From NCBI GenBank assembly GCA_038087875.1, contig CM075977.1, positions 123,566,001 through 123,630,000 on the forward strand: a stretch of DNA of 64,000 bases. The letters are read 5' to 3'. The notes under the pieces were generated by a model. That model did no database searches and was not told where the DNA came from. It was given only the letters and a program-made list of their open reading frames with translations. Position 1 is the first letter of the stretch. Each line of letters opens with the position of its first letter. A program made the position numbers and the translations under genes. Origin of the DNA: Malacoraja senta. Lineage: Eukaryota. This document shows positions 1,321 to 35,129 of the stretch, in pieces.

Positions 1321-1413
1321 AAGATAGACTCAAAATGCTGGAGTAACTCAGCGGGACAGGCAGCATGTCTGGATAGAAGGAATGGGTGGCGTTTCGGGTC
1401 GAGATCCTTCAGC
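1321..1413 (-). mobile_element. Mini-PLE (pLTR-derived, hammerhead-bearing), tail-less
   Basis: AAGATAGAC...GCTGGAGTAACTCAGCGGGACAGGCAGCAT...GTTTCGGGTCGAGATCCTTCAG, similar to the 7037-7130 pLTR end. Confidence 0.88.
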
Positions 1414-2969
1414 CAGAAAAAGAGAAATTATGAAAAACAAAAATAAAAGTAATTTCTTGGCAAATAAAATTGAAATTACACAACTTTGATCACAGCACAA
1501 TTAGAGCAATGAAGAACGAATAGGTAGTTATATTATTCGGCTGCTTTAACTTCCCCCTTTGTTGCTGAATACATCTGAAAGTGGTCTGAATTGAAACTGG
1601 GTACACTCAAGAATGTTCAATTCCTCACCGACCAAGATCTAGAGATGAGGTTTATCAAATATGTTCACGACAAGGACGATACATAGTGGAGGAAAAACTC
1701 ACATCTGCAATGCTATGACCAATTCCTAACTAAAAAGAAAAGAGATGCTGTAAAGGAATTATGATTTAATACCATTTAGGTTTTCAACAGTCTAATCTGA
1801 GGTTAAACAAACAGAGTAGCGTTATGTATCAAACAGTTTGGCTTTTCCATTATGTTTATATGATCTTTGTGATCAATCTATTTCTTGTTTATCCTCCGTT
1901 ACCTAGTGGTGCAATTATCCTTTCCTATACTAAAGCAACTGAGAGTAAAGGGCCACACATAAAAGATTCAGGACATTTGAGAAGAAAGGTTCTATCAGTG
2001 CCAAAATTCTTCCTGTTCTCCAGGGAACACTGGGTCACCATCAATGCAAATCTCAAAAAACTAAATAATCCTGAAGAGATAAACAAAAACTATTGCTATT
2101 TCCTGATAGATCAGAAACCAACTGGAGAGAAAGTAACTGAGGAACATTTCAGATTGATGAACTTTCATCCAAATGAGATAGAAGGCACCCACAACCAGCA
2201 TTATTTCCAGCATTTTCTGAGGGGTTTTAATGTTAAGTTAAAGTCAGCCATTGTAAATGCCCGTGACTCTCTCAGTCTACCTCATCGCTGAGTTTCCTCT
2301 TCCCGTATCTACGGGAAACTTCACTTGCTAATTTACAGAGGAGCAAATCAACTCACCCCAAACCAACCAATGTTGAATCACCAAAAGCTATGCAAAAATA
2401 TTTGAATTTTTCTCACTCCCAAAACCAGTCACAAATTGTATTCCATTGCACAAGATACAACCTTGACTTTCTTATGAGAATGCATCATAATGTAATTACG
2501 CAATAAAATGAGAATATAGAATGATAATAAATAGTTTCATCTCTCAACATGTTTGGCATGGACATTGTGGGCCGAATGACCTGTGCCTGTGCTAATAAAG
2601 AAACTCCAATAAAATAAGAACTATTTCATAGTGTATGTTATCAGCAATTTAATTACCCTCAACGACTCTTCAGTAGTAGAATGCTAGGAATTCCAATCAT
2701 TGCTTTGAGCTCCATCTGGCCCATACCCAAGTATCAGGCAATAAATCCAAGAGGTGGGGAAGGTAACCTGAACTGGCCATTTATTTAACATGTGCAACCC
2801 AAGGCAGTTAGTGTTTCACCAGCAGTCGTTAAATCGGTGCCAGCAATATAGCCTAAACCCGTGAAAGAGGCCACTTAAATGCATTCAGCTTTCTCAAGAA
2901 AATAGTGAAAATATAAGCATTTTCCATTAGGCTCATTGCCATGCATTGCACAACTCATAACAAACCCAA

Positions 2970-3172
2970 GATTGACACAAAAAGCTGGAGTAACTCAGTG
3001 GGACAGGCAGCATCTCTGGGGAGAAGCAATGAGTTACGTTTTGGGTCAAGACCCTTCCTCAGACCCGAAAAGTTACCCATTCCTTCTCCTCAGAGAAGCT
3101 GCCTGTCCCGCCGAGTTACTCCAGCTTTTTGTGTCTATCTTTGGTTTAAACCAGCATCTGCAGTTCCTTCTT
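2970..3172. mobile_element. Palindromic mini-PLE (two inverted pLTR ends joined at the hammerhead)
   Basis: Inverted arms meeting at ~3062; perfect 17-bp TSD ACTCATAACAAACCCAA at 2953-2969 and 3173-3189; tail only on the right arm. Confidence 0.92.
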
Positions 3173-5196
3173 ACTCATAACAAACCCAAATGGCTCACTG
3201 CACTAAAGAAATGCCTATCGGGATTCAATTCCCTGTCCAGGAGGAGCCAGTTAATCTCAATTAGAGAAGCAATGGGTCAGTTCAATCTGTCTCAGCATCC
3301 TGGGACTGGAGTATCCCACGACCGATCCGTATTACAGAACGTCTCATGATAAATGCTGCTCCATGGACGATGATGAGAGCAGAATTAAGCTCAATTCTGA
3401 TGTCTCCTTTGATAAGATTGCCATTCAACACACACAATACAGACTAAAAATGTGGGAGGAATGACATAGATGAATCTATAATGCTGTTCAGCTTCTGCTT
3501 TCAAAAGGACAGAAAAATATTTTAAGTTTAATCAAAGAATGAGAATAATTGCACATCTTTTTTTGTGAGCAGAGAATGGGTGCCCTGGTTCGACCATACA
3601 TTAGGTAATCATGTCAGGAGACTTAGTTTAAGTATTATTTTTGAATAGGGTCAGTGTTGCATGGCAATTACACATTTAGGAATGTTGGTAAATAAACCAC
3701 ATTAAGCAGTTTCTGTTTCAGCACACACTCCAGAAATGCATAATATCATTGCACGGAATCCTCAGTGTTTATATAAAAACACTGATGTTACACTAACACT
3801 CACAAATTAAAATAATTAGCATCATGCACCCACTGCTGTGTGGATTTAGTCCAGTAGCTTCAAAGTTTAACACTGCCCTCATTTACTCATCCCTTTATGA
3901 CCTTTGACCATGCCCCACCTTGACAATTTTTGAAATAATTGGCTCCTCATTACTGTCTCAGCAGCATTCACTTTTGTTCCTAACAGTGGTGAAAATATAT
4001 TAGTACAAGAGTGCTTCACCATTCCACAATGTACTGCTCCTGTACATTAGAAACAGAATATTATCTACATGAATAACAATACTATTAAGCATACCTCAAG
4101 CAGTTAAAAGAGGATTGATTCCAACCTCTCCCCAAATGAGGAACCAACACAGAACAGAATGAAATATTTCAGATAAATTAGGAAAATCATACTAATGCCC
4201 AATGGACAAATGAATGCAGACATTGTGCTGAATTTCAAAATTCTCATTTCACGGGTGATTTAATTCATGGCCAGTTATGTTAGGAGTTCAGTGCTGAATC
4301 TGTTATCAAAACAGTAATTCTGAGGTTTGGATCAACATGAACAGCTGAAGGTTTTTTTGCAGACTCCTTATCCTCCAAATGTTTTTACTTTTTCAAGTAC
4401 ACATAAATAAGATTATTGATGAAATCAAACAAGAAGTCAGAACAAGAAAGGGGAGCATTTGTGTGAGGTAGCAGCCTCCAGAAAAATTAAACCCTTCATT
4501 TCCAATATGCTCTTAAACTCCTCTCCTAATTACTGGACCTTCCGGGTCTGCCAGCTCTGACAAAAGATACTGACAAGACAACAAACCAAAACTGAAACTG
4601 CAACACATGTTCAGAGCATATTCAAAAACTTTCTCCCAACCTGCGGGAGTATTATCTCGATCGACCAATGAAGAGAAAAGTCGGATTTGAGGCATCGCAG
4701 TCAGGAATGAATATGGGGCCATTCTCACCCATTCCTTGAGAAGGCACATTGCTTTATCATGGCAGGAGCATGTCACAAGTTATGCACATGGTGTGTGATG
4801 ATGAACTGACTTTCTACTCCAGTGTCCACAGTAAGAATAAAAATAGCCATCAATTTTCCTAAAAATGATTTGTGCCAAGTTTCTACTCTCCTTTTCTTTA
4901 TCTGCCATTTCTCTGGCCTTTCATGCACTGCCTTTTCCCGCCATTGTATTGCTCACACATGCTTTCTTCATTAGTAAATCTATAATTCTGTTATCATACT
5001 CAAATGTCTTTCTTTGCATCTTCTCCCTTACAAATTTCCACTTTTGTAAGTTCTTTAGTGTTTCTATTTGACATGTGTCTGATAATAGCACAGTAACAGT
5101 ATAAAATATTCCACAGTATTCACTTAACTAACCTCTATTAATCATTGGTTTATGTTAGATCTCTGCAGCAGGGGCCAGCAATTTACTGAAAGAGTA

Positions 5197-5433
5197 GAAA
5201 TAAAGAACTGCAGATGCTGGTTAATATTCAAACGGACACAAAGTGCTGGAGTAACTCAGCGGGTCAGGCAACATCTCTGGAAAACATGGATAGGTGATGT
5301 TTTGAATTGAGACTCTTGTTCAGACTGAAAAAGGGTCTGAAGAATGGTCTCAACCCAAAACGTCATTTATCCATGTTCTCCATGGATGCTGCCTGACCCA
5401 CTGAGTTACTCCATCAGTTTGTGTCCTTCTGTG
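5197..5433. mobile_element. Palindromic mini-PLE with two divergent hammerhead motifs
   Basis: 13-bp TSD TACTGAAAGAGTA at 5184-5196 and 5434-5446; tail only on the left arm; centre TTCAGACTGAAAAAGGGTCTGAAGAA. Confidence 0.9.
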
Positions 5434-6191
5434 TACTGAAAGAGTAAATACAATTTGATCCAAGCTGACGCATCAATACTCCTATCATTGGGATCATCTG
5501 ACAAGATAAAAGGTGGATCCTTGGATTGTTGGTTCTAAGAATTATCATGAGAGGCAGAATAAAGTACAAGCCCCATTCATGCCAGCACTCCAATTGTACA
5601 CTGCAAAAGAAAAATGGGGCAAGCATCAATCATTGTACTTACTCCTTTTGAAAACTGCTCTCCCACCATGCAAGCAACATATAAAAATATCAGAAGACCT
5701 AAATGTTTTGTTCAGCTTCAAACACTTGTGCTTAAAAGTTTGTCAAATACAGCTGTCAGGCCAAGATTAGTGAAAGCATGCAAGTCATTTCAGGTAGCTG
5801 CCTCAAGTAAAACACCTGCCTTGGTGGGCCACAGAGCAGTCAGCACAAGCGCAGAATATTCCCTCCTGACTACTGGCCAGTCAGTGAATAATAGAAAAAT
5901 ATATGTTTTATTACCTTCACAGTTAAAAACGACCTAAAGTTTGGTTTAGGTAGATAACAAAAGCTCTGCGTAAACCCAAAAAGTAATTTCATGCGTGAAG
6001 GGGCAGGTAAGACTTTGCCATCATGCGCTCCTGAAATAAATCAAACTCAGGTCAGCTTTTGGCAGAAATAAAATATATTTCAGTGTCTACTTAACTATCT
6101 TTTGTTCACTGGTTCACCAAGGGTTCTTAGACTAGGAAAAACTATTCATAAGAAGAGAAATGGACATCATAATTGAGGCAGATGTGTCTTA

Positions 6192-6480
6192 ATCATAATC
6201 GCACTTTATTAGCCAAGTATGTTTTGCAACATACAAGGAATTTGATTTGCCATACAGTCATCATACCAATAAAAAGCAGCAGAACACACAAAATACATTT
6301 TAACATAAACATCCACCACAGTGACTTCTCCACATTCCTCACTGTGAAAAAAAGTTAAATCTCTTCCCTTCTTTGTTCTCCCGCGATCGGGGGCCTCGAG
6401 CCTTCTGTTGACGGGGCGATCTTGACTCCCGTAGCAGGCGGCGTTTGGGCCCTCGCGTCGGGGCGATCTGACCCCGGTTC
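6192..6480 (-). mobile_element. Non-autonomous retroposon, 5'-truncated (same family as 24391-24915)
   Basis: About 170 bp shared with 24407-24582 (CTTTATTAGCCAAGTATGTTTTGCAAC...AATCTCTTCCCTT), then a GC-rich GGGGCGATC repeat segment. Confidence 0.7.
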
Positions 6481-7270
6481 AGGGCTGGTCATGCAGCAGG
6501 AGCCCAATGCTCCCTCAAATATGTCAAACAAAAGATGCTCAGATTATCCAGTTAAGAAATCAAGCATCTGGGCCAGCAAAGCCTGAACTAATGGCAAAGT
6601 CAGATCACCAAATGTAGTGGGCAGATTTTCACCCGAGCACTTCCAACAGTTGGAAACACGCACACAATAGTGGAAGATTGACCAATTCCCATTGATGAAC
6701 TCCACACATATTTCATAGAAACAAGGAACTGCAGTTGCTGATTTGCACTAAAGGACACAAAGTGCTGGAGTAACTCAGCGGGTCAGGCAGCATCTCTGGA
6801 GAATATGGACAGGTTGACGTTTTGGGTTGTGACTTTCTTCAGACCAAAGACATGCTTCAGACTGATTAATGGGGGGGAGGGAGAATGCTGGGAGGAATGA
6901 GGAGGCCGGACAAAGCATGGCAGGTAATAGGTGGACACGGTGGAGGGGATTTTATTAGGCAAATGGTTGGAACAAAAGACAGAGAAGGTGTGAGACAGAC
7001 TGTTAAAGAAGGAACTGCAGATGCTGGAAAATCGAAGGTACACAAAAATGCTGGAGAAACTCAGTGGGTGCAGCAGCATCTATGGAGCGAAGGAAATAGG
7101 TAACGTTCGGGCCGAAACCCTTCTTCAGACTGATAGGGGGTGGGGAGAAGAAAGGAAAAAAGGAAAAGGCGGAGGAGGAGCCCGAGGGCTGGGGGAGGGG
7201 AGGAGACAACCAGATGGCTGATGAAGGGGAGGGGACAGCCAGGGCTAGCAGAATTGGGAGAATTCAACGT

Positions 7271-8855
7271 TCAGGCCACCAGGATGTAGACTGCCCAAGC
7301 GGAATATGAGGTGCATTTCCTCCAATTTACGGTGTTGCTCGCTGTGGCCATGGAGGAGACCCAGGACAGAGAGGTCAGATACGGAATGGGAGGGGGAGTT
7401 GAAGTGCTGAGCCACCGGGAGTTCAGGTTGGTTATTGCGGACCGACCGGAGGTGTTTCGGACGAAACGATCGCCAAGCCTCCGCTTGGTCTCACCGATGT
7501 AGATCAGCTGGCATCTAGAGCAGCGAATGCAATAGATGAGGTTGGAGGAGATGCAGGTGAACCTCTGTCGCACCTGGAACGACTGCTTGGGTCCTTGAAT
7601 GGAGTGGAGGGGGGGAAGTGAAGGGACAAGTGTTGCATCTCATGCGGTTGCAAGGGAAAGTACCAGGGGAGGGGGGTGGTATGGGAGGGAAGGGAAGAAT
7701 TGACAAGGGAGTTACGGAGGGAGCGGTCTTTGCGGAAGGCAGACATAGGGGGAGATGGGAAGATGTGGCGAGTGGTGGGGTCACGTTGGAGGTGGCGAAA
7801 CTGACGGAGGATCACTTGTTGTATGTGACGGCTGGTGGGGTGAAAGGTGAGGACTAGGGGGACTCTGCCTTTGTTGTGAGTGGGGGGATAGGGGAGAGAG
7901 AGCAGTGTTGCGGGGTATGGCAGAGACCCTGGTGCGAGCCTCATCTATGGTGGAGGAGGGGACCCCCGTTCCCTGAAGAATGAGGACATTTCAGATGCCC
8001 TGGTGTGGAACGCCTCATCCTGGGAGCAGATGCGGCGTAGACGGAGGAATTGGGAGTGGGGGATGGAGTCCTTACAGGAAGCAGGGTGGAAGAAGTGTAG
8101 TCCAGATAGCCATGGAGTCGGTGGGTTTGTAGTGGATGTCGGTAAGGAGTCTATCACCTGCGATGGAGATAGTGAGGTCAAGGAATGGTAGGGAAGTGTC
8201 GGAAATGGTCCAGGTGTATTTGAGTGCCGGATGGAAGTTGGTGGTGAAGCGGATGAAGTCAGTCAGTTGTGTGTGGGTGCAGGAATGTGGCACCAAAACA
8301 ATCATCGATGTAGCGGAGGTAGAGGTCGGGGATGGGGCCCTGGTACGCATTGAACAAGGATTGTTCTACGTACCCGACAAAGAGGCAGGCGTAGCTGGGG
8401 CCCATGCGTGTGCCCATAGCTACACCTTGTATTTGGAGGAAATGGGAGGAGTCAAATGAAAAGTTATTAAGTGTAAGTACAGCTCCGCTAGGCGGAGGAG
8501 GGTGTCAGTGGCTGGGTATAGATTGCTTCTACGGTCGAGGAAAAAACGGAGGGCTTTGAGACCATCCTGGTGGGGGGATGGAGGTGTACAGTGACTGGAC
8601 GTCCATGGTGAAGATGAGGGGGTGAGGGCCTAGAGAGTGGAATGCGCGGAGATGACGGAGAGTGTCTGAGGTGTCTTGAACATAGGTGGGGAGGGATTTA
8701 ACCAAGGGGGATAGTATGGAGTCGAGGTAGGTGGAGATGAGTTCGGTGGGGCAAGAACAGGCAGAGACAATGGGTCTACCGGGACAGTCAGGTTTGTGGA
8801 TTTTGGGGAGAAGGTAAAAGCGGGCTGTGCGGGGCTGGGGGAACGATGAGGTTGG
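7271..8855 (-). pseudogene. PLE polyprotein fragment: reverse transcriptase + Cys-rich linker + GIY-YIG endonuclease, frameshifted
   Basis: Minus-strand motifs ARFYLLPKIHKPDCPGRPIVS, FTMDVQSLYTSIP, GVAMGTRMGPSYA (~8390-8430), LYLRYIDD (YIDD ~8301-8312), FLDL, linker PCNRMRCNTCPF, endonuclease NLIYCIRCSRCQLIYIGETKRRL; split across several frames by 1-bp indels. Confidence 0.93.
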
Positions 8856-9167
8856 AGGCTCCGCAATAACCAACCTGAACTCCCGGTGGCTCAGCACTTC
8901 AACTCCCCCTCCCATTCCGTATCTGACCTCTCTGTCCTGGGTCTCCTCCATGGCCACAGCGAGGCAACACCGTAAATTGGAGGAAATGCACCTCATATTC
9001 CGCTTGGGCAGTCTACATCCTGGTGGCCTGAACGTTGAATTCTCCCAATTCTGCTAGCCCTGGCTGTCCCCTCCCCTTCATCAGCCCTCTGGTTGTCTCC
9101 TCCCCTCCCCCAGCCCTCGGGCTCCTCCTCCGCCTTTTCCTTTTTTCCTTTCTTCTCCCCACCCCCT

Positions 9168-9205
9168 ATCAGTCTGAAGAAGGGTTTCGGCCCGAAACGT
9201 TACCT
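9168..9205 (+). ncRNA. Minimal hammerhead ribozyme motif in PLE pseudo-LTR
   Basis: CTGAAGA (9174-9180), extra A, stem II GGGT-TTCG-GCCC, GAAA (9194-9197), loopless palindromic stem III ACGT, NUH triplet GTT (9199-9201). Stem I is only about 2 bp in cis. Confidence 0.75.
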
Positions 9206-9401
9206 ATTTCCTTCGCTCCATAGATGCTGCTGCACCCACTGAGTTTCTCCAGCATTTTTGTGTACCGTGTGAGACAGACTGATAGTTGCAAATTGTGAAG
9301 CCAGAGAAGTAATGCAGGAGGGGGAGGGGAGAAAGTGATGGCAGCTCTGGTGGGTCACAGGGGCGGGGAGAAAGGAGGAGCGTTTGGGAGGAAAGGAAAG
9401 G

Positions 9402-9442
9402 ATTATTGCTCACGTTAAATACAATTTAACGTGAGCAATAAT
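9402..9442. repeat. Perfect 19-bp inverted repeat with 3-nt spacer
   Basis: ATTATTGCTCACGTTAAAT-ACA-ATTTAACGTGAGCAATAAT. Confidence 0.95.
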
Positions 9443-9834
9443 GACCATATATGGTAATTAGATTATTGTTAAAATCGACCTTGATGACCTTCAGGTGAGG
9501 AAATCTGTTCATCCAAAACTTCTCTGGCCTACATGTCACTCTAGATCCACCAATGGGATTAGTGTAAGTGCAAGTCATTTGGTTAACAGGTAATTGGAGA
9601 TGAATAATAAATATTGATCTTGCCAACATCGTCTGCATTTTTTGTTTGATAAAATTAATAATGCAGTTACTTTTTATGGGCAGGATTACAATAAATGGGC
9701 AACTTTCTATTGGATCTTTGAGTTAAGATTCATTCAAGAGGGTTTTAAAGATCGCCTGGTGCAAATTTGAAGACAAACTACATTATTTCTTACTTGACAT
9801 TCCTCACTCAATCAAATCATCAAGGCAGTCCTGT

Positions 9835-9900
9835 TGAAAGGTCTTCAATCTAAAACATTAACTCTGTACAGATGCTGGCTGACATGCTGAGGAATTCCAT
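9835..9900 (+). mobile_element. Old decayed PLE pLTR remnant
   Basis: GAAAGGTCTTCAATCTAAAACATTAACTCTG...CAGATGCTGGCTGACATGCTGAG resembles the pLTR body; a similar remnant lies at ~35530-35615. Confidence 0.5.
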
Positions 9901-9931
9901 TTTAGTTTTTTACATCTGAACTGTTTAACAA

Positions 9932-14598: not shown

Positions 14599-14697
14599 AA
14601 GATAGACACGAAAAGCTGGAGTAACTCAGCGGGACAGGAAGAATCTCTGGAGAGAAGAAATGGGTGAGGTTTCGGGTCGAGACCCTTCTTCAGGCTG
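14599..14697 (-). mobile_element. Mini-PLE, tail-less
   Basis: Same family; minus strand reads CTGAAGAAGGGTCTCGACCCGAAACCTCACC. Confidence 0.88.
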
Positions 14698-14949
14698 AAA
14701 GTCAACATGATTTTTTTCTACATTATCAAGCTATTTCATTGGCAATGACAAAGTGACTCAATGCTGTCATTTAACAGTCGAGGCTCGCATTAGACCAAGG
14801 GAATGGGCAATGCGTGAGCAAAAGAAACAACACATTTTAATCAATTTTTAATCACTCAGTATTAAGGAAATAAATTTGGATCTGATGTCACCGCATTGAT
14901 TGAGTTAACAGTAATAGCCCAGTCATTCTTTTTAGTTACTTTTTACTTA

Positions 14950-15137
14950 TAGAGATACAGCGTGGAAACAGGCCCTTCGGCCCACCCAATCCACATGGAC
15001 TAGCGATCACCCCCTTACACTAACACTATCTTACACACTAGGGACAGGTTACAATTTTTACTAATGCCAATTAACTTACAAACCTTTGAAGTATTTGGAG
15101 AGTGGGGGGGAAATCAGAGCACCCGGAGAAAACACAG
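14950..15137 (-). mobile_element. HE1-like V-SINE, 5'-truncated
   Basis: AGAGATACAGCGTGGAAACAGGCCCTTCGGCCCA...GAGCACCCGGAGAAAA. Confidence 0.82.
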
Positions 15138-15242
15138 CTATATATCCTAAGCTACCTAATATTGTATTGGCCCACAGACAATGAGCTGCAGTGAGATGCC
15201 TGCTCAAAACAGGTAGCTCTGCAGGACCATTTTAATGAGACA

Positions 15243-16494
15243 CTAGACTAAGTGGGACACGTTGGGTCCCTGTCACACAATATTCCACCACTCACCCATA
15301 GCCCCCAACTGCACAGGCGCTGCTCATTTCCCCTCATCCCGAGCACTCTCTCCCCCTGCTCTTCTCTTCACTCTCCCTCTTTCCCCTCTCCTCCTCCACT
15401 CCCCCAATCCTTCCCTCACCTCTCTCTCCCTCTCCTTTCCCTTACCCTGTCACTCCCTCCCTCCATAACTCCTCTCCCCTCCCTACCCCCCGCCTATCCC
15501 CCACTCACCTCCCTCTATCCACCCCACTATCCCTCCTCACCTCCCCCACTGCCCTCCTCTCTCTGTATTCCCTACTCCCTACCTTCCCCATTCCCCCCTC
15601 CTCTACTCCCCCTTCCTCTCCCTCTATTCCCACTCCTCCCCCACTCTCACTCCTCTTTTCCCTCTCTTCCTACTCTTCCCCAATCCCTACCTCACCTCTC
15701 CTTTCCTTTCCCCTACCCTCAGTCACTCCCTCCATAACTCCTCTCCCGTCCTCTCCCTCTATCCCCTCTCCTCCCCCACACTCCCTCCTCACCTCCCCAG
15801 GATCTTGAGGTTGCTGTTCTTCTCCCTTCTTGCGTGCCCCAGAGGAGCATCAGCCATCGGTGTGAATCCTCGGCTCGGCCCGGAAGCACCAGCAGCCACG
15901 GCCACGCCGACGTGTGGGTGGGGGAGTGGGTTGGAGAGCTCGGAGAAAAGGCGGGGGAAGATCCATGGGGGAGAGGGGGTATCACGGGGGATGGGGCAAT
16001 AGCCAGCGAGGGGAAGGGGCTGGAGCTGTTGGGCATTGCGATGGCGGTGCGTTTGGGACTCTATCCTCCGCTGGGATCAGACTCTCCGCTTTCCGTTTGG
16101 CGACATCTCCGACTCCGCGCCGGGCCGCTTCCGGACCCTCCGAAAATTGTGTCCGGTTGGAGACCTCCGCCGGCCACCCACTGCGTCCCTCAGCTCCAGT
16201 AAAGACACGATGGTGCAGGAAGGGGTGGACCGTCCTGGGGAGTGACAGAACAGACCACTCCGCGCGGCGCTGACTGGCATGATCGATCTGCGCTCGCGCG
16301 GTTTTTAAGATTTTTAAACCTCACTAACTTTTACAATATACTACCGATCGGAACGAAACTTGTTGCACTCGCAGCACAAGAGAACGACGAGTGAGCTGCC
16401 AAAAAAAACGTAGCACTATCACATACCGTTTTTGCGCTAATAGAAAAATCGGGCAAACCGGAAGAGCACAAGATCAGTTTTAGTTATGTATAGA
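15243..16494 (-). mobile_element. Non-autonomous Helitron
   Basis: Minus strand starts TCTATACATAACTAAAA (16494), ends with GGGAC-N7-GTCCC hairpin (15254-15270) then CTAG (15243-15246); sits between host A (16495) and T (15242); no TSD. Confidence 0.88.
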
Positions 16495-16659
16495 TGGACC
16501 GCACTGTAGGCAGTGTTTCCCACCAAGACAAGGTGCTCCATCAGTCAGCTAGTGACCTGAGAATTAAAATCTTCCCTCATGAGTCTGGGATGACTTTAAA
16601 TCCAGATTCCAAAAGTGAAAAGCTCTTGTCCAAACACATGGCCAAGCAGTCTCCATTGG

Positions 16660-16868
16660 AGGACACAACATGCTGGAGTAACTCAGTGGGTCAGCAGACT
16701 GAAGGAGTGTTCCAACCTGAAACGTCAGTCAGAAGAATGATCCCAACTGGAAATAGTGGTCTAGAGAAGGGTCCCGACCCAAAACATCACCTATCCCAGT
16801 TCTACGGTGATACTGCCCCACTCACTGGATTACTCCAGCACTTTGTGTCCTTCTTTGTAAGTTCCTTA
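16660..16868. mobile_element. Inverted mini-PLE with tandem decayed hammerhead units; tail split by a Harbinger MITE
   Basis: GGACACAACATGCTGGAGTAACTCAG on the left, TACTCCAGCACTTTGTGTCC on the right; tail GTTCC-TTA continues as TTTCTAC at 17519-17525. Confidence 0.75.
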
Positions 16869-17515
16869 AGTGCCTGCCCCACTGCGGGGACCTAATTTGC
16901 GAGTGTAGAAGAGTTTAGGAGAGTATGAAAAAGTGTCATGGTCGTGTTGTATCGCCGAAGTAGAATACCTCCTTCAACCTTCCTCGACTATGTAGAGAAC
17001 CTCCTACGAATATGTTGAACACCTCCTTCGACTATGTAGAAGACCTCCTTCGATCTCCTTCGACTATGTTGAAGACTAGCTTCGACTAGCTTCGGGAAAA
17101 TTGGACACCGAATAGTGTAGAGTGAAGACGACCTCCTTCGATCTCCTTCGACCTCTTTCGACTATGTTGAAGACTATCTACGACTATCTACGACTACCTT
17201 CAACTACCTTCGACTACCCTCAATTCCCTTTGATTACTTACGAATAACATGCCGACCTACTTCAACTAAACCTACGAGTAAAAAAAATATTGATTTTTTT
17301 CCATGGCGACATTTTTTTACTTGCGGGCATTTTTCAGCATGCTAAACAAAACGTCGCAACCTAACTGAGGCCTCGAGTACGCGGGGACTACTCTCAAGCA
17401 TGAAGGAGAGTTACAAAGACCCTCCTAGGACCTCATGTTGACCATGCTGCGAGTACGAGTCGAGGGCAAACTCTTCTAAACTCGCCAATTAGGTCCCCGC
17501 AGTGGGACAGGCCCT
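16869..17515. mobile_element. PIF/Harbinger-type MITE
   Basis: TTA at 16866-16868 and 17516-17518; ~48-bp imperfect TIRs AG(T/G)GCCTG(C/T)CCCACTGCGGGGACCTAATT...AGAAGAGTTT; interior of degenerate CCTTCGACTA repeats. Confidence 0.88.
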
Positions 17516-17796
17516 TTATTTCTACTCTAGGCTTTTGCTCAAGTTTGCATCCCAAATTATGTTATGTTATGTTAAAGTGTTCATAGTGTTTGTCATCATA
17601 AGGTTCAGAATGAGTGTTTGGTCCTTGTACAGTCTGTCAGTATCATGCGAAGACAACTGATTTTACGTCTTATATCAAGAATTGGTATTGAAGATGCTAA
17701 ACTATAATCCTTCCATAATTTACCACCGACTACCCGAATCATCTATACACACCTCCAGCTATTTGTATCTAGGGTTCCTGAAATTTTGTGCAGTTA

Positions 17797-18379
17797 AAGG
17801 CCTGTCTCACGGGTATGAGGTATGAGATTAATATTCAAACCACAGAGTGAAATGCAAACAGCCGGGACCGCCGGCACACCGCCGGGACCGTGCGGTGTTG
17901 GTCCCAACATTCAAAAATGTTGTCCTACCGCACAGCCGCCGCCAGTGCAGCACGAGCACCGCCACAGCCGCCGCCAGTGCGCCGTGAACGCCGTGAGCAC
18001 CACTAGCACCGCCACAGCTGCCGCCAGTGCCCCGTGATCACCACTAGCACCGCCACAGCGCCGCGAGCCGAATTGACGTCATCGCGTAGCGCGTTGCGTT
18101 GCGCAATGTCGTCATCACCCGACGCCGCGCTCGTGGGACAGGCCGTGCGGTGATCACCCGGCATACGCGCGGCAACAGCTTCCGGTAAGGTTTAATTTTT
18201 TTTTTACTTACCGCAAGCTGGTGGGACCGGCCTTACGGAGATCACTCGGCACCCGCGCGGCATCCGTGCAGCGCTCCAGCGACATTCGCGCGGCGCTCTC
18301 GCGAGAGCGCCGCGCGGTCCCCGCTTCTGCCAACGCCGCGCTTCACCGCCAGTAACCGCCTGACCGTGGAACAGGGCCA
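17797..18379. mobile_element. PIF/Harbinger-type MITE, GC/CpG-rich
   Basis: TTA at 17794-17796 and 18380-18382; degenerate TIRs AAGGCCTGTCTCACGG / TGGCCCTGTTCCACGG; internal GCACCGCCACAGC repeats and TGACGTCA at 18074-18081. Confidence 0.75.
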
Positions 18380-19077: not shown

Positions 19078-19186
19078 TGTGTAGGAAAGAAAAAAGAAGG
19101 GTCTCGATCCGAAACATCACCCTTACCTTCTCTCCAGAGATGCTGCCTGTCCAGCTGAGTTACTCCAGCATTTTGTGTCTATCTTC
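19078..19186 (+). mobile_element. Mini-PLE with short inverted tail fragment
   Basis: GTGTAGGAAAGAA (inverted tail) followed by GAAGGGTCTCGATCCGAAACATCACC...GTGTCTATCTTC; imperfect 15-bp TSD (13/15) at 19067-19081 and 19184-19198. Confidence 0.82.
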
Positions 19187-21989: not shown

Positions 21990-22070
21990 GAAGATAGACA
22001 CAAAAAGCTGCAGTAACTCAACGGGACAGGCAGAATCTCTGGAGAGAAGGAATGGGTGACGTTTCGGGTC
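21990..22070 (-). mobile_element. Mini-PLE, tail-less, truncated inside hammerhead stem II
   Basis: AAGATAGACACAAAAAGCTG...GGGTGACGTTTCGGGTC. Confidence 0.85.
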
Positions 22071-28811: not shown

Positions 28812-28955
28812 ACGTGTGCACACACACACACAGCGCGCGCACAGAGCGGGCTGACTCAGAGTGCGTACGCACAAAGCGTATCCGGAAACAGCACAAGCAC
28901 ACACACAGCGCACGCATACACACAGCGCATGCACACACACTCACACTGACACACT
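28812..28955. repeat. Degenerate (CA/CG)n alternating purine-pyrimidine tract
   Basis: CACACACACACAGCGCGCGCAC...GCACGCATACACACAGCGCATGCACACAC. Confidence 0.8.
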
Positions 28956-29576: not shown

Positions 29577-29702
29577 CCGAAGGGTCTCAACCCAAAACAT
29601 CACTTATTCCTTTTCTCCAGAGATGCTGTCTGACCCGCTGAGTTACTCCAGCTCTTTGTGTCTATCTTCGGTTTAAACCAGTATCTGCAGTTCCTTCCTA
29701 CA
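29577..29702 (+). mobile_element. Mini-PLE with tail
   Basis: GAAGGGTCTCAACCCAAAACATCAC...GTGTCTATCTTCGGTTTAAACCAGTATCTGCAGTTCCTTCCTACA. Confidence 0.87.
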
Positions 29703-29831
29703 TGTTCAGGAGCGTTGGGGATCAGGGTGTGGTGCAAAAGGATTCAGGCAACAGAGATTTGGATGAACATATATACAAATGTTAGAAGGAGGAAGTCTGT
29801 TCAACAGTGCAGTAAAACTTTGATAACCTCA

Positions 29832-29924
29832 GACACAAAATGCTGGAGTAACTCAGCGCGTCAGGCAGCATCTCTGGAGGGAAGGAATGGGTGACATTTC
29901 GGGTCGAAAACCCTTTGTCAGACA
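29832..29924 (-). mobile_element. Mini-PLE, tail-less
   Basis: 9-bp TSD ATAACCTCA at 29823-29831 and 29925-29933. Confidence 0.88.
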
Positions 29925-32900
29925 ATAACCTCATATTTTATTGTTTGCAAATCCTGATGGTTTGGCATCCAGTTGGCTGAATGTTCTATTTTTCCTTTTA
30001 AACTCACCACTCAGCCTCCTGCTCTCAATATCCAGTATAACAATTAAAACAGTTAAATAAAAAAGTGTGTTGGGGTATTAACATGAGTAACATCGTGGAA
30101 TATCTGCTGGTCTAACACCACTATAGTCCTGGGGATACTGGATAGTCAGTTTTTATGCACATTATCTAGATTAAGTTGAGGGGTAGCAATATTAAGGATG
30201 AGAGGACATATGCTGAATGGTGGAAATAAGTGGTCTTAGTTATGATCACACATGCTCTGAAAATTTACCCTGGTGTCAATCGTGACCACAGGGCTGAGAA
30301 AAGTCTGGTTTGGTTTTGAATAAAAGTTTGGTTTCTCTGGAAGAGAAGAAAGGAAGCAAGTGGCAGCCACTACAATCTTAAGTATTGATTATTGTTGAAA
30401 ATATTGACTTAAAACTTCCTTTCTTCTTCAATAATATTTCTGATAACAAGATGAGGATTTTTGATGCGATGTAATTCGCATATCACACTGCTCCGTTGCT
30501 GGATTAAAGGTTCAGTTCCCTAAGTCAGAGCTAAGAGTTTTTATTTGCTAGGCTTGTTGTGCTGATTAATGTTAAGGATACCTGCATTTGAAGAATGAAA
30601 GAAACTTTGATATCCAATGTTGGTATCATGCACTGCAAAGTCAGATGATGCTTCCCGGCTTCACTTTCTATTCCACTTTCCAAATCATCTTTATGGCTTT
30701 TCTGAATTAGTCTGTGATTTGTTGCAGCCAATTTCACAACTAAGGGGAACTGGACCTACTCTGACAAACACTACTCTAAGTAAAACTGCCGCAGCTAACA
30801 AGGAAAGTAAATATTTAATTCTAAGTTGGATTCTAATCTAGGAACTGGATATACAAGGGCATGTTCACACAGCTGGTCACAAGTGAGCATACTAGTTTCT
30901 TTAAAAGAAAGTTTAACAGTGATTTATACCACAACAAACATTAACCTCGGTCCTCTAAGTTTCAAATAATATTGTGCCAATTAATTTATGGCTCAGTTCC
31001 ATTCTAGTCACATTAATTTCTTATCAAATAAAACCAAAGAATGATACTCAATTGGATACTATACATAATATTGTACAGATAATACACAATATGGTTTATG
31101 CCCATCCTTTCTGCCAGGTGTCAATCAATGCTGAGACAAGACTTACTCGTTCAAACTGTAGAATAAGACATTCTGCCTGTTCTTGAAGAATTAAAGCTGT
31201 ATTCCAAGAGCACAGACCTCGGAATAACTTGGGTACAGAGTCCTATTCAAGTAAGTCTGACAAGAGGGGGTGACAGATTAGACTTCATTCACATCTCAGA
31301 TGCCAAGGTAGTTAAGGCAAAATTGTGTTTCAGGACACCTGCTGGCTGGGAAATAAGTGAAAAGTAACACTTACTCATTTACGGGGATTCCTCCCTGTGT
31401 ATTCAGAAAATAAACAACTTGCTGAGAGATAGATTGGCTTCTAGTCACTAGACTAACAGCAGCAGGATCTGTGGTGCCAAGGATCAGCAGGCAACCACCA
31501 AGGAGAAGCAAGCCAAATGAAAGTCAGACAACTGCTTTAGCCAGACAATACATGATGTGTCAAGGAAAACAAAACAGTTCGAAATTTCTCCTTCAATAGC
31601 TTGAGGAGAAACAAAGTCAAAAGATATTGGGGTGCAAATTACTATTATAGCAGTGCAGGAGACAAACAGATACTTTGCTCAGGTTGTGGAGGACAATAAA
31701 TATATTTACATGCAAAGACACATGCTTTAAGGATTTGGACTTCTAAGTGTATTTAATATTGGTAGTGGAATGTCTGAAGTATCTGTACTAAAGGTATTTC
31801 AAACTTATCAAACATGATTCCTCACCCACACCCTTATCTTTAATTGCTGCACCCATTCACTATTGGGTAACAGTCTAGTTTTTTTAGTAAGCTTTCAAGT
31901 CATTACAAGCCAAATAAATTCTTCTGAATAATATTCTTTCACATACTTCCTTGTCTGATGGTATTGGAAAACTATTTTCTGTAGGAGTTTGCGTTAACAG
32001 CAAAGCCAAAGCATATTTCCAACTCGTCCCAGGGTTAACTCTCTCCTTACGTCAACTATTCTTCTATCTATTCTTGGCAAAAAAATCAAATATACCACTA
32101 TTTGCTCTAATTGAATGTTTTCCTTTGGTTAAGGTGGAGTGATCAGAGTTTTTCTTTTGTCAGCTTTCTGCTGTTAAATATTTCCAATCTGCTTTAAATT
32201 TTAACCCCAAGAGGAAGAATTCCATCCTTTTGGTACAATGGCTACTGTGACTAGGTGGGGTAAATAACGGATGAATCCCAGATGGACAGAGTAGCAGGAG
32301 AACATAGAAGCCTAGAAACATACACCACTGACAGGAAGAAACATTTCACAGGCAAAAAAATATACTAAATGATCAAAGAAAGGGAATGTGTCTTTAATTT
32401 ACCTTTAACTCAATCTCAACTGAACTGCACCCTAAAAGATCAAGGTGGGATTTTCTTTCCATTAAGGTGTTTCCATGCTAGCTCTCTAGGATGCCCTTTG
32501 CTCTTTTGTAATATGTTACAGATTGTTTCAGGCTTCCATTCAAAAGGCTGGTCACAGCCATTCTCTAGAGTCTTGTTTATTGTTTACATTGGTAATTGCC
32601 ACTACTCTGATGGCATGTGAAAGGGCTTCTGTCAGATATATTTCCAGAGCCAGAAAATTTAGTTTTTGTTTGATTGCAACATCCTTGGTTGGGCAGTTAT
32701 TTTGAGAATCACTTATATTTCAGAAATGTACATGTTTATTATGTTCCTTTGGATTACATCAGTGCCTAGCAGCTCAAAAGCATTGAAAAGTTAACACAAT
32801 TAATTATTTGTCAAACAATATGTTTATTGGGAGTGAACAGTGAGCTGGGAATTAGTCCTTTGTACAGTGAAGGCAGGTGGCCATTTTAAGCAGGTTCTTG

Positions 32901-33617
32901 TGAGTTAAGCCATTGTTGAACAGAAAGAAAATACTAATTCATTTCAAATGAACTTCTGATGTGACAGTGCCCCCAACCATAGTAAAGGAGTAATTCTCTT
33001 AGCGATCTGATCAAAATGCCTGTTTGGCAGAATCCAACATGGCACTAAACTCCAGGTCCACTTTCAATTTTGTTTAATATGTTTGAACTGGGAAAGAGCT
33101 AAATGAAAACCATATTCACAAATCTCTGTGAAAACTGTCACAGAGTTGTAGTCTTGCTCCTTGATCTCATGGTTCCATTTTAAATGCAGAAACCCAAGCT
33201 TGACAGGTGTAATAAGGAAGAAAGTCTTCAAAAAAGCAGACTCGATTCTGTTGCCCATGCTTCTTTAAACAAGCAGTGCACAGTCATTCCTTTAAGGTTG
33301 ATCTATTTCTCAACCTATTTCATGCAAGCCCGTAGGACTATACAAATGGAAACTATTTTAACTTTGAACTTATCCTCACACAGCACCATCCTGAAATACT
33401 GCAGAGGAACTTTGCTCTGAAGTTTCTTTAGGTTTAACATGTTGTATAAAGGGTCAAAGCCTTCATTGTTAAGTTCCCCAGTCTATGAGACTAGTATACT
33501 CATTTTTTAGGTTTGAATGGGTAATTTGTTACCACGTCTAGTCATGACATTGAGCAGCGATAGACATCAACTAATTAACTAAATAGGTGAATTATTTGCC
33601 ATTACAGTTGTAGAAAT

Positions 33618-33918
33618 GGGCGGCATGGTGGTGCAGCGGTAGCGTTGCTGCATTACATCACCAGTGACCCGGGTTTGATCCCGACTATGGGTGCTGTCTG
33701 TACGGAGTTTGTACGTTCTCCCTGTGCCCTACGTGTGTTTTCTCCGAGATCTTCCGTCCTCCCACACTCCAAAGACGTACAGGTTTGTAGGTTCATTGGC
33801 TTGGTACAAATGTAAATTGTCCCTAGTGTGTGTAGGATAGTGTTAATGTGTGGGGATCGCTGGTCGACGCAGACTCGAAGGACCTGTTTCCGCACCATAT
33901 CTCTAAACTAAAACTAAA
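33618..33918 (+). mobile_element. HE1-like V-SINE, full length
   Basis: GGGCGGCATGGTGGTGCAGCGGTAG head, V-domain, CTAAACTAAAACTAAA tail. Confidence 0.9.
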
Positions 33919-34677
33919 TTTAATTTAGGATCAACACATATGTTTACCTGGTTGGTAAGGCCATGAACTGTTGTCTAGAGTACAAAGCTGCAGGTGATCA
34001 ACAATATTGTTGTGCTATTTTTAATAGTGTGTAGAAAATAGAACAAGTTTACTATAACCTATGCTGATTGTAATAATGCCCTCCATTGTTCTGCTTTTGT
34101 TAGCTAGGGTCCAAATAAGGTTTGTTGCCTCCGGCATAAATGAAGAACCAAAAAAAACTCTGAAAACACAGAACATCAGCCAGTACTGTTGGAACCAATA
34201 TGTGAGCATATACCAATGGTGTAAGTTGAGCCTGGATATCCTTGGGCGATTCTGCTTAATCCTCAGTTAGTATTTCTTTCATATAAGCATGCAAACTCCC
34301 TCCACAAAACAGCAGCTAATGGCTGTAACCTGCACAATCTGGTCAAGAACTGAAATACAGCACCATCCTGTTAATGGTTTGGGTTCAAAAGAGCATTGTG
34401 ATGTCAATTCCAAGCACAATTTTCACAACTTACATCTTACCAGCTGCATTTGCAATCAAATACCTGCCAGAATTAGGGCCCAGTGAATCAAACAGCTTTA
34501 TCTCAAGCCACAAAGAAAATGGGAACTCTGATATTACTAGAATAAGATAAATACCTACTTTCCATGATTTCAAGTGTAACGTATGGCGATGAAACATTGT
34601 AAGCACTATCCAGTACATTTTTAAACATAAAGGCATTTTTAAAAGTGCCTATCTCTGTACCCAAATTTTATTAAGGC

Positions 34678-34778
34678 CAAAGGTCGACACAAAATGCTGG
34701 AGTAACTCAGCGGGACAGGCAGCATCTCTGGAGAGAAGGAATGGGTGACGTTTCGGGGTCGAGACCCTTCTTCAGACC
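34678..34778 (-). mobile_element. Mini-PLE, tail-less, hammerhead core retained
   Basis: 11-bp TSD TTTATTAAGGC at 34667-34677 and 34779-34789; minus strand GGT-CTGAAGA-AGGGTCTCGACCCC-GAAA-CGTC-ACC. Confidence 0.9.
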
Positions 34779-35129
34779 TTTATTAAGGCTTCTATCCACA
34801 ATTCTTGCCACGGACGTGTTAAAGTAAACTGATCTCTTACCACAAACTGGAGCACTCTGGATTACTTGTATGCAACCCAAGCTGTCACAGATCTCATTTT
34901 TATTGGAAGTGCTTGTAAATACGTCTTTGCCATCACCACCTGACAGCAATTAACTTGGAGGCTAAAATATGAAACGTCTGTTTGTCTATTAGCACGCAAT
35001 CCCTAGGATGCAGTTTTTAACGTTGTGCTCATCAGAACTTAATAACAATAGGAATTTATTTCTACATGCTTTTCAGAATTATTCCCATCTATTAAAATCA
35101 TTGAATGTCCCCCTTCACCCATCACAAAC

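What the first reader, a model, noticed from the sequence alone, without database searches (positions are those of the whole stretch)
1321..34789. Family of 90-250 bp hammerhead-bearing mini-retroelements derived from the PLE pseudo-LTR, inserted with their own TSDs
Seen: at least nine short copies (1321, 2970, 5197, 14599, 16660, 19078, 21990, 29577, 29832, 34678) made of little more than a minimal hammerhead motif plus ~70 nt of pLTR, several with exact 9-17 bp TSDs. Known: PLEs carry minimal hammerheads with palindromic stem III that are thought to act as dimers, and non-autonomous ribozyme-bearing retrozymes exist. Inference: this is a high-copy ribozyme SINE-like family mobilised by Neptune PLE RT/GIY-YIG, with no tRNA head. 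Its subtypes differ in sequence from the young PLE at 7003, so several masters are involved.
Basis: partly seen in the sequence, partly recalled or inferred. Interest (0 to 1): 0.8.

Follow-up and report, generated by a model that had tools for sequence, protein, structure and literature searches.

The report
Broken-off Penelope retroelement tails with hammerhead motif
The short repeats are real and very abundant, but they are best read as the cut-short tail ends of a Penelope-like jumping gene, carrying the minimal hammerhead motif already described for that class, rather than as a new self-propagating ribozyme element.

Summary
Observation confirmed. Every listed copy exists, and nhmmer finds 19 family hits, all within 1-36 kb. 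Five insertion units have exact 9-17 bp TSDs. The unit is the last 95-130 nt of a Penelope-like element (PLE). The copy at 7003-9266 shows it 121 nt downstream of a GIY-YIG ORF whose linker carries the Neptune-type CX4CxxC motif.

The family consensus matches the published PLE minimal hammerhead. Only one copy in the window (9174-9201) keeps an intact core, and Rfam finds nothing.

Known PLE biology accounts for the anatomy:
- the two 3' ends, tail-less and with a 31-nt tail;
- the head-to-head inverted pairs, each with one long TSD;
- the heavy 5' truncation.

One feature goes beyond ordinary truncation. 5' ends pile up at the 5' edge of the hammerhead (11 of 15 arms within about 35 nt), while depth over the PLE body falls smoothly.

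I found no master copies, no direct tandems, no dedicated transcript and no RNA ends at the cleavage site. Most likely these are dead by-products of PLE reverse transcription, not a SINE-like lineage. That rival is not excluded.

The scan has already noted this family in many other windows of this genome. One follow-up there reached the same verdict.

The parts
1321..1410 (-). Solo short copy, subtype A. Tail-less 3' end (...GAGTCTATCTT). The 5' end lies inside the CTGAAGA box (starts GAAGGATC).
   Evidence: TSD at most 6 bp, not resolvable.
2965..3172 (.). Head-to-head inverted pair, subtype A. The left arm (2965-3065, sense on the minus strand) is tail-less and starts at GGTCTGAGG. The right arm (3062-3172, sense on the plus strand) bears the tail and starts at GACCCGAAAAG. 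The inner junction has a 4-nt overlap. TSD is the 17-bp ACTCATAACAAACCCAA at 2953-2969 and 3173-3189.
   Evidence: Arms are 86.7% alike.
5197..5433 (.). Head-to-head inverted pair, subtype B. The left arm bears the tail and the right arm is tail-less. TSD is the 13-bp TACTGAAAGAGTA at 5184-5196 and 5434-5446.
   Evidence: Arms are 82.5% alike.
6718..6987 (-). Older, longer subtype-B fragment: the terminal unit with tail plus about 130 nt of PLE 3' UTR. The young element at 7003-9266 splits it, and it resumes at 9282 and runs to about 9400.
7003..8860 (-). Young PLE copy, subtype C, 5'-truncated inside the RT. From the 3' end it holds a tail-bearing terminal unit (7003-7140), a 121-nt spacer, GIY-YIG (about 7248-7640), the CNRMRCNTC linker motif, and the RT with YIDD (about 8260-8500). 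The reading frame is broken by several frameshifts.
   Evidence: GIY-YIG, E 0.0058, below the Pfam cutoff; 3432 relatives.
8860..9266 (+). Inverted 407-nt arm of the same insertion. It covers the GIY-YIG C-terminus, the spacer and a tail-less terminal unit, and holds the only intact minimal hammerhead core in the window (9174-9201). TSD of the whole structure is the 15-bp GTGTGAGACAGACTG at 6988-7002 and 9267-9281.
   Evidence: 99.3% identical to the other arm.
14599..14701 (-). Solo copy, subtype A, tail-less. Its 5' end lies 9 nt upstream of CTGAAGA (CTTTCAGCC...), which matches the PLE read-through sequence.
16658..16857 (.). Composite. A short antisense fragment (16658-16696) is followed by sense sequence with three decayed hammerhead-core segments about 31 nt apart and one full subtype-B-like unit (16756-16857). 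No TSD.
19094..19186 (+). Solo copy, subtype A, tail-less (+1 nt). The 5' end lies inside the CTGAAGA box (AAGAAGGG).
21991..22070 (-). Solo copy, subtype A, tail-less. The 5' end lies at the 3' strand of helix II (GACCCGAAACG), so the core is incomplete.
29579..29697 (+). Solo copy, intermediate between subtypes A and B, tail-bearing. The 5' end is at GAAGGGTC.
29831..29925 (-). Solo copy. Its 3' end is even shorter (...GTGTCT) and its 5' end lies 3-4 nt upstream of CTGA. TSD 9 bp.
34680..34778 (-). Solo copy closest to the family consensus (3% divergent), subtype A. It runs from GGTCTGAAGA to ...GACCTTTGG. TSD is the 11-bp TTTATTAAGGC at 34667-34677 and 34779-34789. One extra C in helix II.
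35531..35615 (+). Old copy of a more distant subtype (D: ...GCTGCCTGGCCAGCTGAGTTTTTCCAGCA) with a decayed core. A similar weak relic lies at 9831-9899 (+).

Best explanation
These are terminal fragments of Neptune-type Penelope-like elements, each made in a single insertion event by the PLE's own RT and GIY-YIG machinery. They are dead on arrival.

Inferred from the one PLE studied in vitro: reverse transcription starts at one of two internal sites of the PLE RNA. That would give the tail-less end (...GTGTCTATCTT) or the end bearing the 31-nt tail (...CAGCATCTGCAGTTCCTTC). It then runs only about 65-130 nt before it stops at or near the 5' edge of the hammerhead region.

When both target strands are cut and extended, the two short cDNAs meet head to head. 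The result is an inverted pair inside one long TSD.

The minimal hammerhead is a passenger, inherited from the parent element. In the parent it may act, if at all, as a weak, dimer-dependent and probably protein-assisted ribozyme. It does not define the ends of the inserts.

Why 5' ends pile up at the hammerhead edge is not shown. My preferred guess is that the short products are run-off cDNAs made on the 5' leader of PLE transcripts. In tandem copies the hammerhead and the RT start sites lie just upstream of the ORF, close to the RNA 5' end. An RT stall at helix II is the alternative.
For: Shown here:
- The unit is the 3' end of a PLE. It lies 121 nt downstream of the GIY-YIG stop in both arms of 7003-9266.
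- There are two 3' end classes 31 nt apart. Each is spread over a few nt, and each is directly followed by TSD or unrelated flank.
- Genome-wide, the strongest loose ends in the source organism's contigs and in relatives' RNA reads fall exactly at these ends: 6754-6757, 3170/3174 and 7001. The flanks beyond them are of low agreement.
- Three of three TSD-bounded inverted structures pair a tail-less arm with a tail-bearing arm.
- No copy begins at the predicted cleavage site GUC|ACCC.
- Depth over the PLE body falls smoothly, from about 790k to 57k over 1.4 kb.
- Copy 14599 reads 9 nt upstream into PLE-like sequence.
- RNA reads on the units are strand-symmetric (744/698, 850/808, 962/1061). 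93% of the reads laid run on into unlike sequence. No start or end pile-ups were listed.
- Copies are decayed, 3-24% from the window consensus, with G12 and G16.2 lost at CpG sites.
- In two full-length relatives the hammerhead lies about 70-190 nt upstream of the ORF start.

From the literature:
- A PLE RT initiates at two internal RNA sites that delimit the 'tail'.
- It cuts and extends both DNA strands.
- The product runs to the RNA 5' end.
- RNA downstream of the start site is required.
- Hammerhead cleavage is dispensable (all PMC11167929).
- Heavy 5' truncation, adjacent inverted copies and a 30-40 bp tail at one end are standard PLE features (PMC8557442).
- Dispersed single min-HHRs are 'probably related to truncated PLEs' (PMC4209133).
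Against: - 5' ends are not spread as simple truncation predicts. 11 of 15 arms end within about 35 nt around CTGAAGA. The decay seen over the PLE body predicts about 6% per 35 nt, so the probability of this by chance is of order 1e-10. The comparison is rough because it crosses subtypes.
- Four arms share the same start, (G)GTCTGA.
- No subtype-A or subtype-B body is available, so I could not show that A and B minis have autonomous parents.
- The requirement for RNA downstream of the start site comes from one Poseidon-clade element in vitro, not from this lineage.
- The run-off idea rests on an unmeasured transcription start site.
Confidence: 0.65

Rival explanations
1. A true non-autonomous family, SINE-like or retrozyme-like. 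Short master copies, possibly in tandem elsewhere in the genome, are transcribed and mobilised in trans by PLE RT/EN. The hammerhead helps process or circularise the template.
For: - 5' ends cluster, with four arms starting at the same (G)GTCTGA.
- Copy number is very high: unit depth 1e5-1e6 against about 6 for unique DNA.
- Subtype A is seen here only as short copies.
- In vitro, a roughly 200-nt RNA around the hammerhead and RT start site is a sufficient PLE template (PMC11167929).
- Some contigs and reads show direct tandem joints, such as '6810 goes back 59' and '5302 to 6756'.
- Vertebrate non-LTR retrozymes are reported to derive from PLE terminal repeats, with solo monomers common (bioRxiv 10.64898/2026.07.22.740005).
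Against: - The window has no direct tandem of units.
- 5' ends fall in four sub-clusters over 35 nt, and two arms extend upstream of the supposed start.
- Tail-less solo copies lack everything 3' of the RT start site.
- The hammerhead is the minimal PLE variant, not the canonical type I of retrozymes.
- There is no strand-specific or end-defined RNA signal.
- There is no Pol III head.
Confidence: 0.25
2. Solo pseudo-LTRs, left after recombination between the two terminal repeats of once full-length tandem PLE insertions.
For: Solo repeats keep the original TSD, so TSDs alone do not exclude this.
Against: - The copies have ragged 5' ends over 35 nt and two alternative 3' ends, rather than one fixed repeat unit.
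- Head-to-head inverted pairs inside a single TSD cannot arise this way.
- The units are far shorter than the span between the ORF stop and the element's end.
Confidence: 0.04
3. Host-recruited ribozymes or regulatory RNAs, kept by selection at these positions.
For: The motif is present in many transcripts, in RNA-like runs of several relatives.
Against: - Core positions are decayed in nearly all copies, mainly at CpGs.
- RNA coverage is strand-symmetric, as expected of passengers in host transcripts.
- The hammerhead fold is not the predicted stable fold: -4.2 against an MFE of -9.4 kcal/mol.
Confidence: 0.03

Closest known systems
Minimal hammerhead motifs (min-HHR) of metazoan Penelope-like elements (Cervera & de la Pena 2014, PMC4209133). 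The variant hammerheads with reduced stem III that cleave as dimers are cited from my own knowledge (Lunse et al. 2017); I did not read that paper here.
   Same: - CUGANGA and GAAA boxes.
- One unpaired nucleotide between A9 and G10.1.
- A G10.1-C11.1 pair.
- A 4-bp helix II with a tetraloop.
- No helix III, only the palindrome A-C-G-U followed by the cleavage-site C or U.
- A short helix I.
- Located in the PLE terminal repeat.
- Mostly found as dispersed single motifs, and sometimes as close pairs on opposite strands.
   Different: This is a lineage of a cartilaginous fish, with its own sequence subtypes. Helix I is only 2-3 bp. Cleavage was not tested.
PLE insertion anatomy: 5' truncation, adjacent inverted 5'-truncated copy, and an optional 30-40 bp 'tail' (Craig et al. 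2021, PMC8557442). The tail is explained by two internal RT start sites and by cleavage and extension of both strands (Frangieh et al. 2024, PMC11167929).
   Same: A 31-nt tail present at one end only, head-to-head inverted pairs within one TSD, TSDs of variable length, and hammerhead cleavage not defining the insert ends.
   Different: Here most products are extremely short (about 95-130 nt). Their 5' ends pile up at the 5' edge of the hammerhead. I did not find that detail stated in the papers I read.
Metazoan non-LTR retrozymes (Cervera & de la Pena 2020, PMC7229834; Li, Clavereau & Pollet 2026, bioRxiv 10.64898/2026.07.22.740005)
   Same: Short, non-coding, hammerhead-bearing sequences related to PLE terminal repeats. 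Solo 'monomers' are common and dispersed.
   Different: Retrozymes are defined by direct tandem repeats of about 150-450 bp, carry canonical type I hammerheads, and give circular RNAs. None of this is seen here.
SINEs that share a 3' tail with a partner LINE
   Same: Short, non-coding, very abundant, with a 3' end identical to that of an autonomous retroelement.
   Different: No Pol III promoter head, no single shared 5' end, and no evidence of master copies.

Membership tests
PLE minimal hammerhead (min-HHR) | Conserved boxes CUGANGA ... GAAA ... U-H in type I order | tested here: met
   Present in the window consensus and intact in copy 9174-9201 (shuffles average 0.01 hits). Most other copies have lost G12 or G16.2 at CpGs or lack the 5' half. 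The reference's 1-nt gap at 7105 is filled in 1639 of 3091 RNA reads, so GAAAC is the common family state there.
PLE minimal hammerhead (min-HHR) | Unpaired nucleotide between A9 and G10.1, and a G10.1-C11.1 pair | tested here: met
   CUGAAGA-A-GGGU(CUCG)ACCC-GAAA. Subtype C has GGGU(UUCG)GCCC, where U-A becomes U-G and the pair is kept.
PLE minimal hammerhead (min-HHR) | No helix III; palindromic 15.2-16.2 that allows a dimer | tested here: met
   GAAA-CG-UC, so A-C-G-U is self-complementary. The predicted duplex is worth only -1.7 kcal/mol.
PLE minimal hammerhead (min-HHR) | Helix I between the sequence 5' of CUGA and the sequence 3' of the cleavage site | tested here: inconclusive
   GGU/ACC gives 3 bp in subtype A and GU/AC gives 2 bp in subtype C. 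Helix I of 2-5 bp is reported for PLE motifs (PMC4209133). The predicted MFE fold instead pairs GAAGAAGG with CCUUCU.
PLE minimal hammerhead (min-HHR) | Self-cleavage at the H17 site | not testable with these tools
   No RNA start or end pile-up at the site in one poly(A) RNA-seq run of a relative. This is weak evidence.
Rfam hammerhead families | Score against the curated covariance models | tested here: not met
   No hammerhead match at gathering score or at E up to 10. I attribute this to the missing helix III.
Penelope-like element, Neptune clade | RT followed by a C-terminal GIY-YIG with CCHH | tested here: met
   YIDD-type RT pieces are present. The GIY-YIG region reads ...LIYCIRCSRCQLIYIGET... 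followed by ...HFNSPSH.... The Pfam GIY-YIG match has E 0.0058, below the cutoff. The RT piece has 3432 relatives, and the full-length ones carry RVT_1.
Penelope-like element, Neptune clade | CX2-5CxxC motif in the RT-EN linker (Neptune and Nematis; absent in Penelope/Poseidon; PMC8557442) | tested here: met
   FPCNRMRCNTCPF in the frame spanning 7518-7811, minus strand.
Penelope-like element, Neptune clade | Placement inside the Neptune clade on an RT tree | not tested
Penelope-like element, Neptune clade | Insertion signature: 30-40 bp tail at one end, adjacent inverted truncated copy, variable TSD | tested here: met
   31-nt tail; three inverted structures with TSDs of 13, 15 and 17 bp.
Non-LTR retrozyme | Direct tandem repeats of about 150-450 bp, each with a hammerhead | tested here: not met
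   No tandem array of the unit in the window. Only a few tandem-type joints appear among contigs elsewhere.
Non-LTR retrozyme | Canonical type I hammerhead with loop 1-loop 2 contacts | tested here: not met
   This is the minimal variant, with no loop 1 and no Rfam match.
Non-LTR retrozyme | Unit-length circular RNA | not testable with these tools
   Only contigs and one poly(A) run were available.
SINE | Internal Pol III promoter head (tRNA, 5S or 7SL) | tested here: not met
   ARAGORN found none. No Rfam tRNA, 5S or 7SL match.
SINE | Own master lineage, separate from the autonomous partner | not testable with these tools
   This needs genome-wide copies, and only this window was readable.

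The most novel reading that the evidence does not exclude
The short copies are a discrete product class, not random truncations. In tandem copies the hammerhead and the two RT start sites sit just upstream of the ORF. A PLE transcript therefore carries a second, 5'-proximal start site. Initiation there gives a run-off cDNA of about 100 or 130 nt that ends at the transcript's 5' end.

On this reading the pile-up of 5' ends at the hammerhead edge maps the PLE transcription start. The hundreds of thousands of 'minis' are then a built-in by-product that outnumbers productive insertions. A further, less likely step would be that some of these units have become self-propagating retrozyme-like elements.
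Probability: 0.3. Interest if true: 0.5.

Novelty: new member of a known kind. Interest (0 to 1): 0.3.

Why it matters
Rough depth figures and the density in this window both suggest 1e5-1e6 copies. The family is therefore a sizeable part of this cartilaginous-fish genome and of its relatives. Annotators should file it as PLE tails, not as a SINE or as ribozyme genes.

The anatomy in vivo matches what was recently shown in vitro for one lizard PLE: two internal RT start sites, priming on both strands, and hammerhead cleavage that is dispensable. That extends those findings to a Neptune-type element in a distant vertebrate.

The clustering of 5' ends at the hammerhead edge is the one feature that could teach something new about how PLE transcripts start or where the RT stops.

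Tried and rejected
- Rfam at gathering score and at E up to 10: no hammerhead hit. A hand-written minimal-hammerhead descriptor was used instead.
- Thermodynamic folding of monomer and dimer does not recover the hammerhead fold. That is uninformative about activity, given the published low and protein-assisted activity.
- tblastn of the PLE pieces against the window found no second PLE body. The GC-rich stretch at 14.7-16.6 kb is low-complexity and not a PLE.
- I tried to obtain more copies or a full-length tandem copy. The representative search gave mostly short fragments. Three full-length relatives were fetched (L001-L003). They are too distant to carry this unit, though two show a hammerhead about 70-190 nt upstream of the ORF. 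Three look-ups found nothing on record, and one had no DNA.
- A metagenome scan with a 19-nt word gave one chance hit in a 66% GC contig that looks bacterial.
- Read laying lists only the best-supported loose ends, so a genome-wide histogram of 5' ends could not be extracted.
- Solo-pLTR recombination and host-recruited ribozymes were considered and rejected (see rival explanations).

Full report
**Observation**

The family is real. A 31-nt word from the unit matches 12 times at up to 3 mismatches, against 0 expected. blastn with five copies as queries and an nhmmer profile built from 15 aligned arms find 19 hits. All hits lie in 1-36 kb and none in 36-64 kb.

I orient the unit by the strand that reads CTGAAGA-A-GGGTCTCGACCC-GAAA-CG-TC|ACCC..., which is the PLE sense strand. 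On the window's plus strand most copies are therefore antisense (GCTGGAGTAACTCAG...).

An arm consists of:
- about 30 nt of hammerhead-like core;
- about 65-70 nt ending ...CTCCAGCATTTTGTGTCTATCTT;
- in some arms, a further 31 nt, CGGTTTAAACCAGCATCTGCAGTTCCTTC(TT).

Exact TSDs of 17, 13, 15, 11 and 9 bp bound five insertion units. In 5000 random position pairs a match of 9 bp or more occurred in 0.4%. The other six units show at most 6 bp, which is not informative.

**What the unit belongs to**

The structure at 7003-9266 is one insertion with a 15-bp TSD.

Its minus-strand part (7003 to about 8860) is a PLE copy truncated inside the RT. It has RT pieces with YIDD and a linker with FPCNRMRCNTCPF. 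It also has a GIY-YIG (...LIYCIRCSRCQLIYIGET..., then ...HFNSPSH...), with the ORF ending at 7248. The Pfam GIY-YIG match has E 0.0058, below the curated cutoff. The terminal unit follows 121 nt after the stop.

The plus-strand part (8860-9266) is an inverted copy of the last 407 nt. It is 99.3% identical to the other arm, so the event is recent.

CX2-5CxxC in the RT-EN linker marks the Neptune and Nematis clades and is absent from Penelope/Poseidon (PMC8557442). The RT piece has 3432 relatives in the representative library, and the full-length ones carry RVT_1.

**The hammerhead**

Rfam gives no hammerhead match, even at E up to 10.

The family consensus nevertheless shows the features that Cervera & de la Pena list for PLE minimal hammerheads (PMC4209133):
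- the core boxes;
- one unpaired base between A9 and G10.1;
- a G10.1-C11.1 pair;
- no helix III, only the palindrome A-C-G-U;
- location in the PLE terminal repeat.

Helix II is 4 bp with a tetraloop. Subtype C changes U-A to U-G, which keeps the pair. Helix I is only 3 bp (subtype A) or 2 bp (subtype C).

A strict descriptor finds one intact motif in the window, at 9174-9201, against 0.01 per shuffle. The other copies lack the 5' half, or have lost G12 or G16.2 through CpG decay, or carry small indels.

Predicted folding does not favour the hammerhead shape. It scores -4.2 kcal/mol against an MFE of -9.4, and the ACGU duplex adds -1.7. This agrees with the published low activity of such motifs and with their dependence on dimers and protein (PMC4209133, PMC11167929). 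Cleavage was not and could not be tested here.

**Ends and inverted pairs**

There are two 3' end classes, each spread over a few nucleotides.
- Tail-less: 1321, 14599, 19094, 21991, 34680, 2965, 29831, 5322, 9162.
- Tail-bearing: 3062, 5197, 6718, 7003, 29579.

All three TSD-bounded inverted structures are head to head. Each pairs a tail-less arm with a tail-bearing arm.

This is the published PLE signature. It comprises high 5' truncation, an adjacent inverted 5'-truncated copy, and a 30-40 bp tail often at one end only (PMC8557442). In vitro, a lizard PLE protein:
- starts reverse transcription at two internal RNA sites that delimit the tail;
- cuts and extends both DNA strands;
- copies up to the RNA 5' end;
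- needs RNA downstream of the start site;
- does not need hammerhead cleavage (PMC11167929).

No copy here begins at the predicted cleavage site, in line with that last point.

**Genome-wide and RNA evidence**

In contigs of the source organism (run X1), unique DNA has a depth of about 5-9. The units reach 1e5 to 1.3e6 per reference copy. The tool warns that this is not a copy number.

The window's own density is 19 hits per 64 kb, which points the same way: of order 1e5-1e6 copies if the genome is a few Gb, a size I assume and did not measure.

Depth over the subtype-C PLE body falls smoothly, from about 790k near the GIY-YIG to about 57k 1.4 kb further 5'. This is an ordinary truncation gradient.

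The strongest loose ends lie at the tail-less end (6754-6757) and at the tail ends (3170/3174, 7001). Just outside 6754 the consensus still reads the subtype-A tail-less end TATCTT, and beyond it agreement is low.

In poly(A) RNA reads of a related species (run X41):
- the units are covered equally on both strands (744/698, 850/808, 962/1061);
- the PLE body and a neighbouring repeat show strand bias;
- 93% of the reads laid run on into unlike sequence;
- no start or end pile-ups were listed.

The units thus look like passengers in many host transcripts, not products of a dedicated gene.

Several other species hold about a quarter of the 6-kb stretch's words. Presumed RNA runs of relatives hold about 16-21% of the PLE body's words.

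**What is not ordinary**

Of 15 well-defined arms, 11 have their 5' end within about 35 nt around CTGAAGA:
- -9 to -12: 14599, 5197
- -3 to -4: 34680, 2965, 29831, 5322
- about +1 to +5: 1321, 19094, 29579
- +20: 21991, 3062

The decay seen along the PLE body (half-length about 370 nt) predicts about 6% per 35 nt. The excess is therefore far beyond chance, of order 1e-10. The comparison mixes subtypes and is rough.

The pile-up is a zone, not a single point. Two arms run upstream of the commonest start into PLE-like sequence. This does not fit one master with a fixed 5' end.

My preferred explanation is inferred, not shown. In two full-length relatives the hammerhead lies about 70-190 nt upstream of the ORF start. 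In the lizard element it overlaps the start codon (PMC11167929). A PLE transcript would therefore carry the RT start sites close to its 5' end. Initiation there would give run-off cDNAs of about 100 or 130 nt, which is the size of the short copies. An RT stall at helix II is the alternative.

**Comparison and verdict**

The motif is a member of the PLE minimal-hammerhead kind. The insertions carry the PLE signature.

They do not meet the definition of retrozymes, which requires direct tandems, a canonical type I hammerhead and circular RNA (PMC7229834; bioRxiv 10.64898/2026.07.22.740005). They do not meet that of SINEs either, since there is no Pol III head.

Dispersed single min-HHRs were already attributed to truncated PLEs in 2014 (PMC4209133).

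I therefore rate this as a new member of a known kind:
- dead by-products of PLE reverse transcription, 0.65;
- a self-propagating non-autonomous lineage, 0.25, not excluded for lack of genome-wide copies.

The scan has noted the same family in many other windows of this genome. One follow-up there also judged it real but ordinary. I reached my verdict from the tests above.

Noticed in passing
window 1-36000 versus 36001-64000: All 19 family hits lie in the first 36 kb. If hits fell evenly along the window, the chance of that is about 2e-5. The second half is more AT-rich (GC 0.31-0.41) and almost free of internal repeats. Its only repeat is an element with terminal inverted repeats at 60370-62013, which look Tc1-like to me (...CAGTGCCCTCCAAAATGTTTGGGAC...).
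   Followed up: partly
window 34680, 2965, 5322, 6718, 16752 versus 14599, 5197, 7003, 9162: Arms whose 5' end or internal junction lies just upstream of CTGA read (G)GGT-CTGA there. 29831 has TTGT at that spot. Arms that read through into PLE sequence read CAG(T/C)-CTGA. The G at -3 lengthens helix I by one pair. It could be a subtype marker or a base added at the RNA 5' end. There are too few copies to tell.
   Followed up: no
window 16695-16790 (+): Three decayed hammerhead-core segments in direct succession, about 31 nt apart (CTGAAGGAGTGTTCCAACCTGAAACGTC / CAGAAGAATGATCCCAACTGGAAATAG / CTAGAGAAGGGTCCCGACCCAAAACATC). They lie upstream of one full unit. 6718 shows a similar partial duplication (CTGAAGCATGTCTTTGGTCTGAAGAAAG).
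   Followed up: partly
window 6100-6500: A different high-copy repeat. Contig depth is about 78,000 against about 6 for unique DNA. RNA coverage in a related species is strongly strand-biased (226-342 against 33-38). Not identified.
   Followed up: no
window 3174 joined to 5237/5239/6763 in contigs (table 5): Several contigs join a tail-bearing 3' end directly to the tail-less end of an antisense unit. This is a 3'-to-3' arrangement that the window itself does not show. The tail (..CCAGCATCTGCAG..) also resembles the unit's own ..CCAGCATTTTGTG.., so it may be a partial duplication.
   Followed up: no
window 14700-16600 and 16976-18051: A GC-rich (about 0.5), strongly C-over-G skewed, low-complexity stretch with proline- and serine-rich pseudo-ORFs and no Pfam match. 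It is followed by short tandem arrays with periods of 22, 32 and 50 nt.
   Followed up: partly
L002 1124-1148 and 5075-5099: A distant full-length PLE relative on a metagenome-assembly contig. It has two identical hammerhead-like motifs of the U3-A8 type (TTGATAA...GAAA), 3951 nt apart. The first lies 72 nt upstream of the ORF start at 1221.
   Followed up: partly
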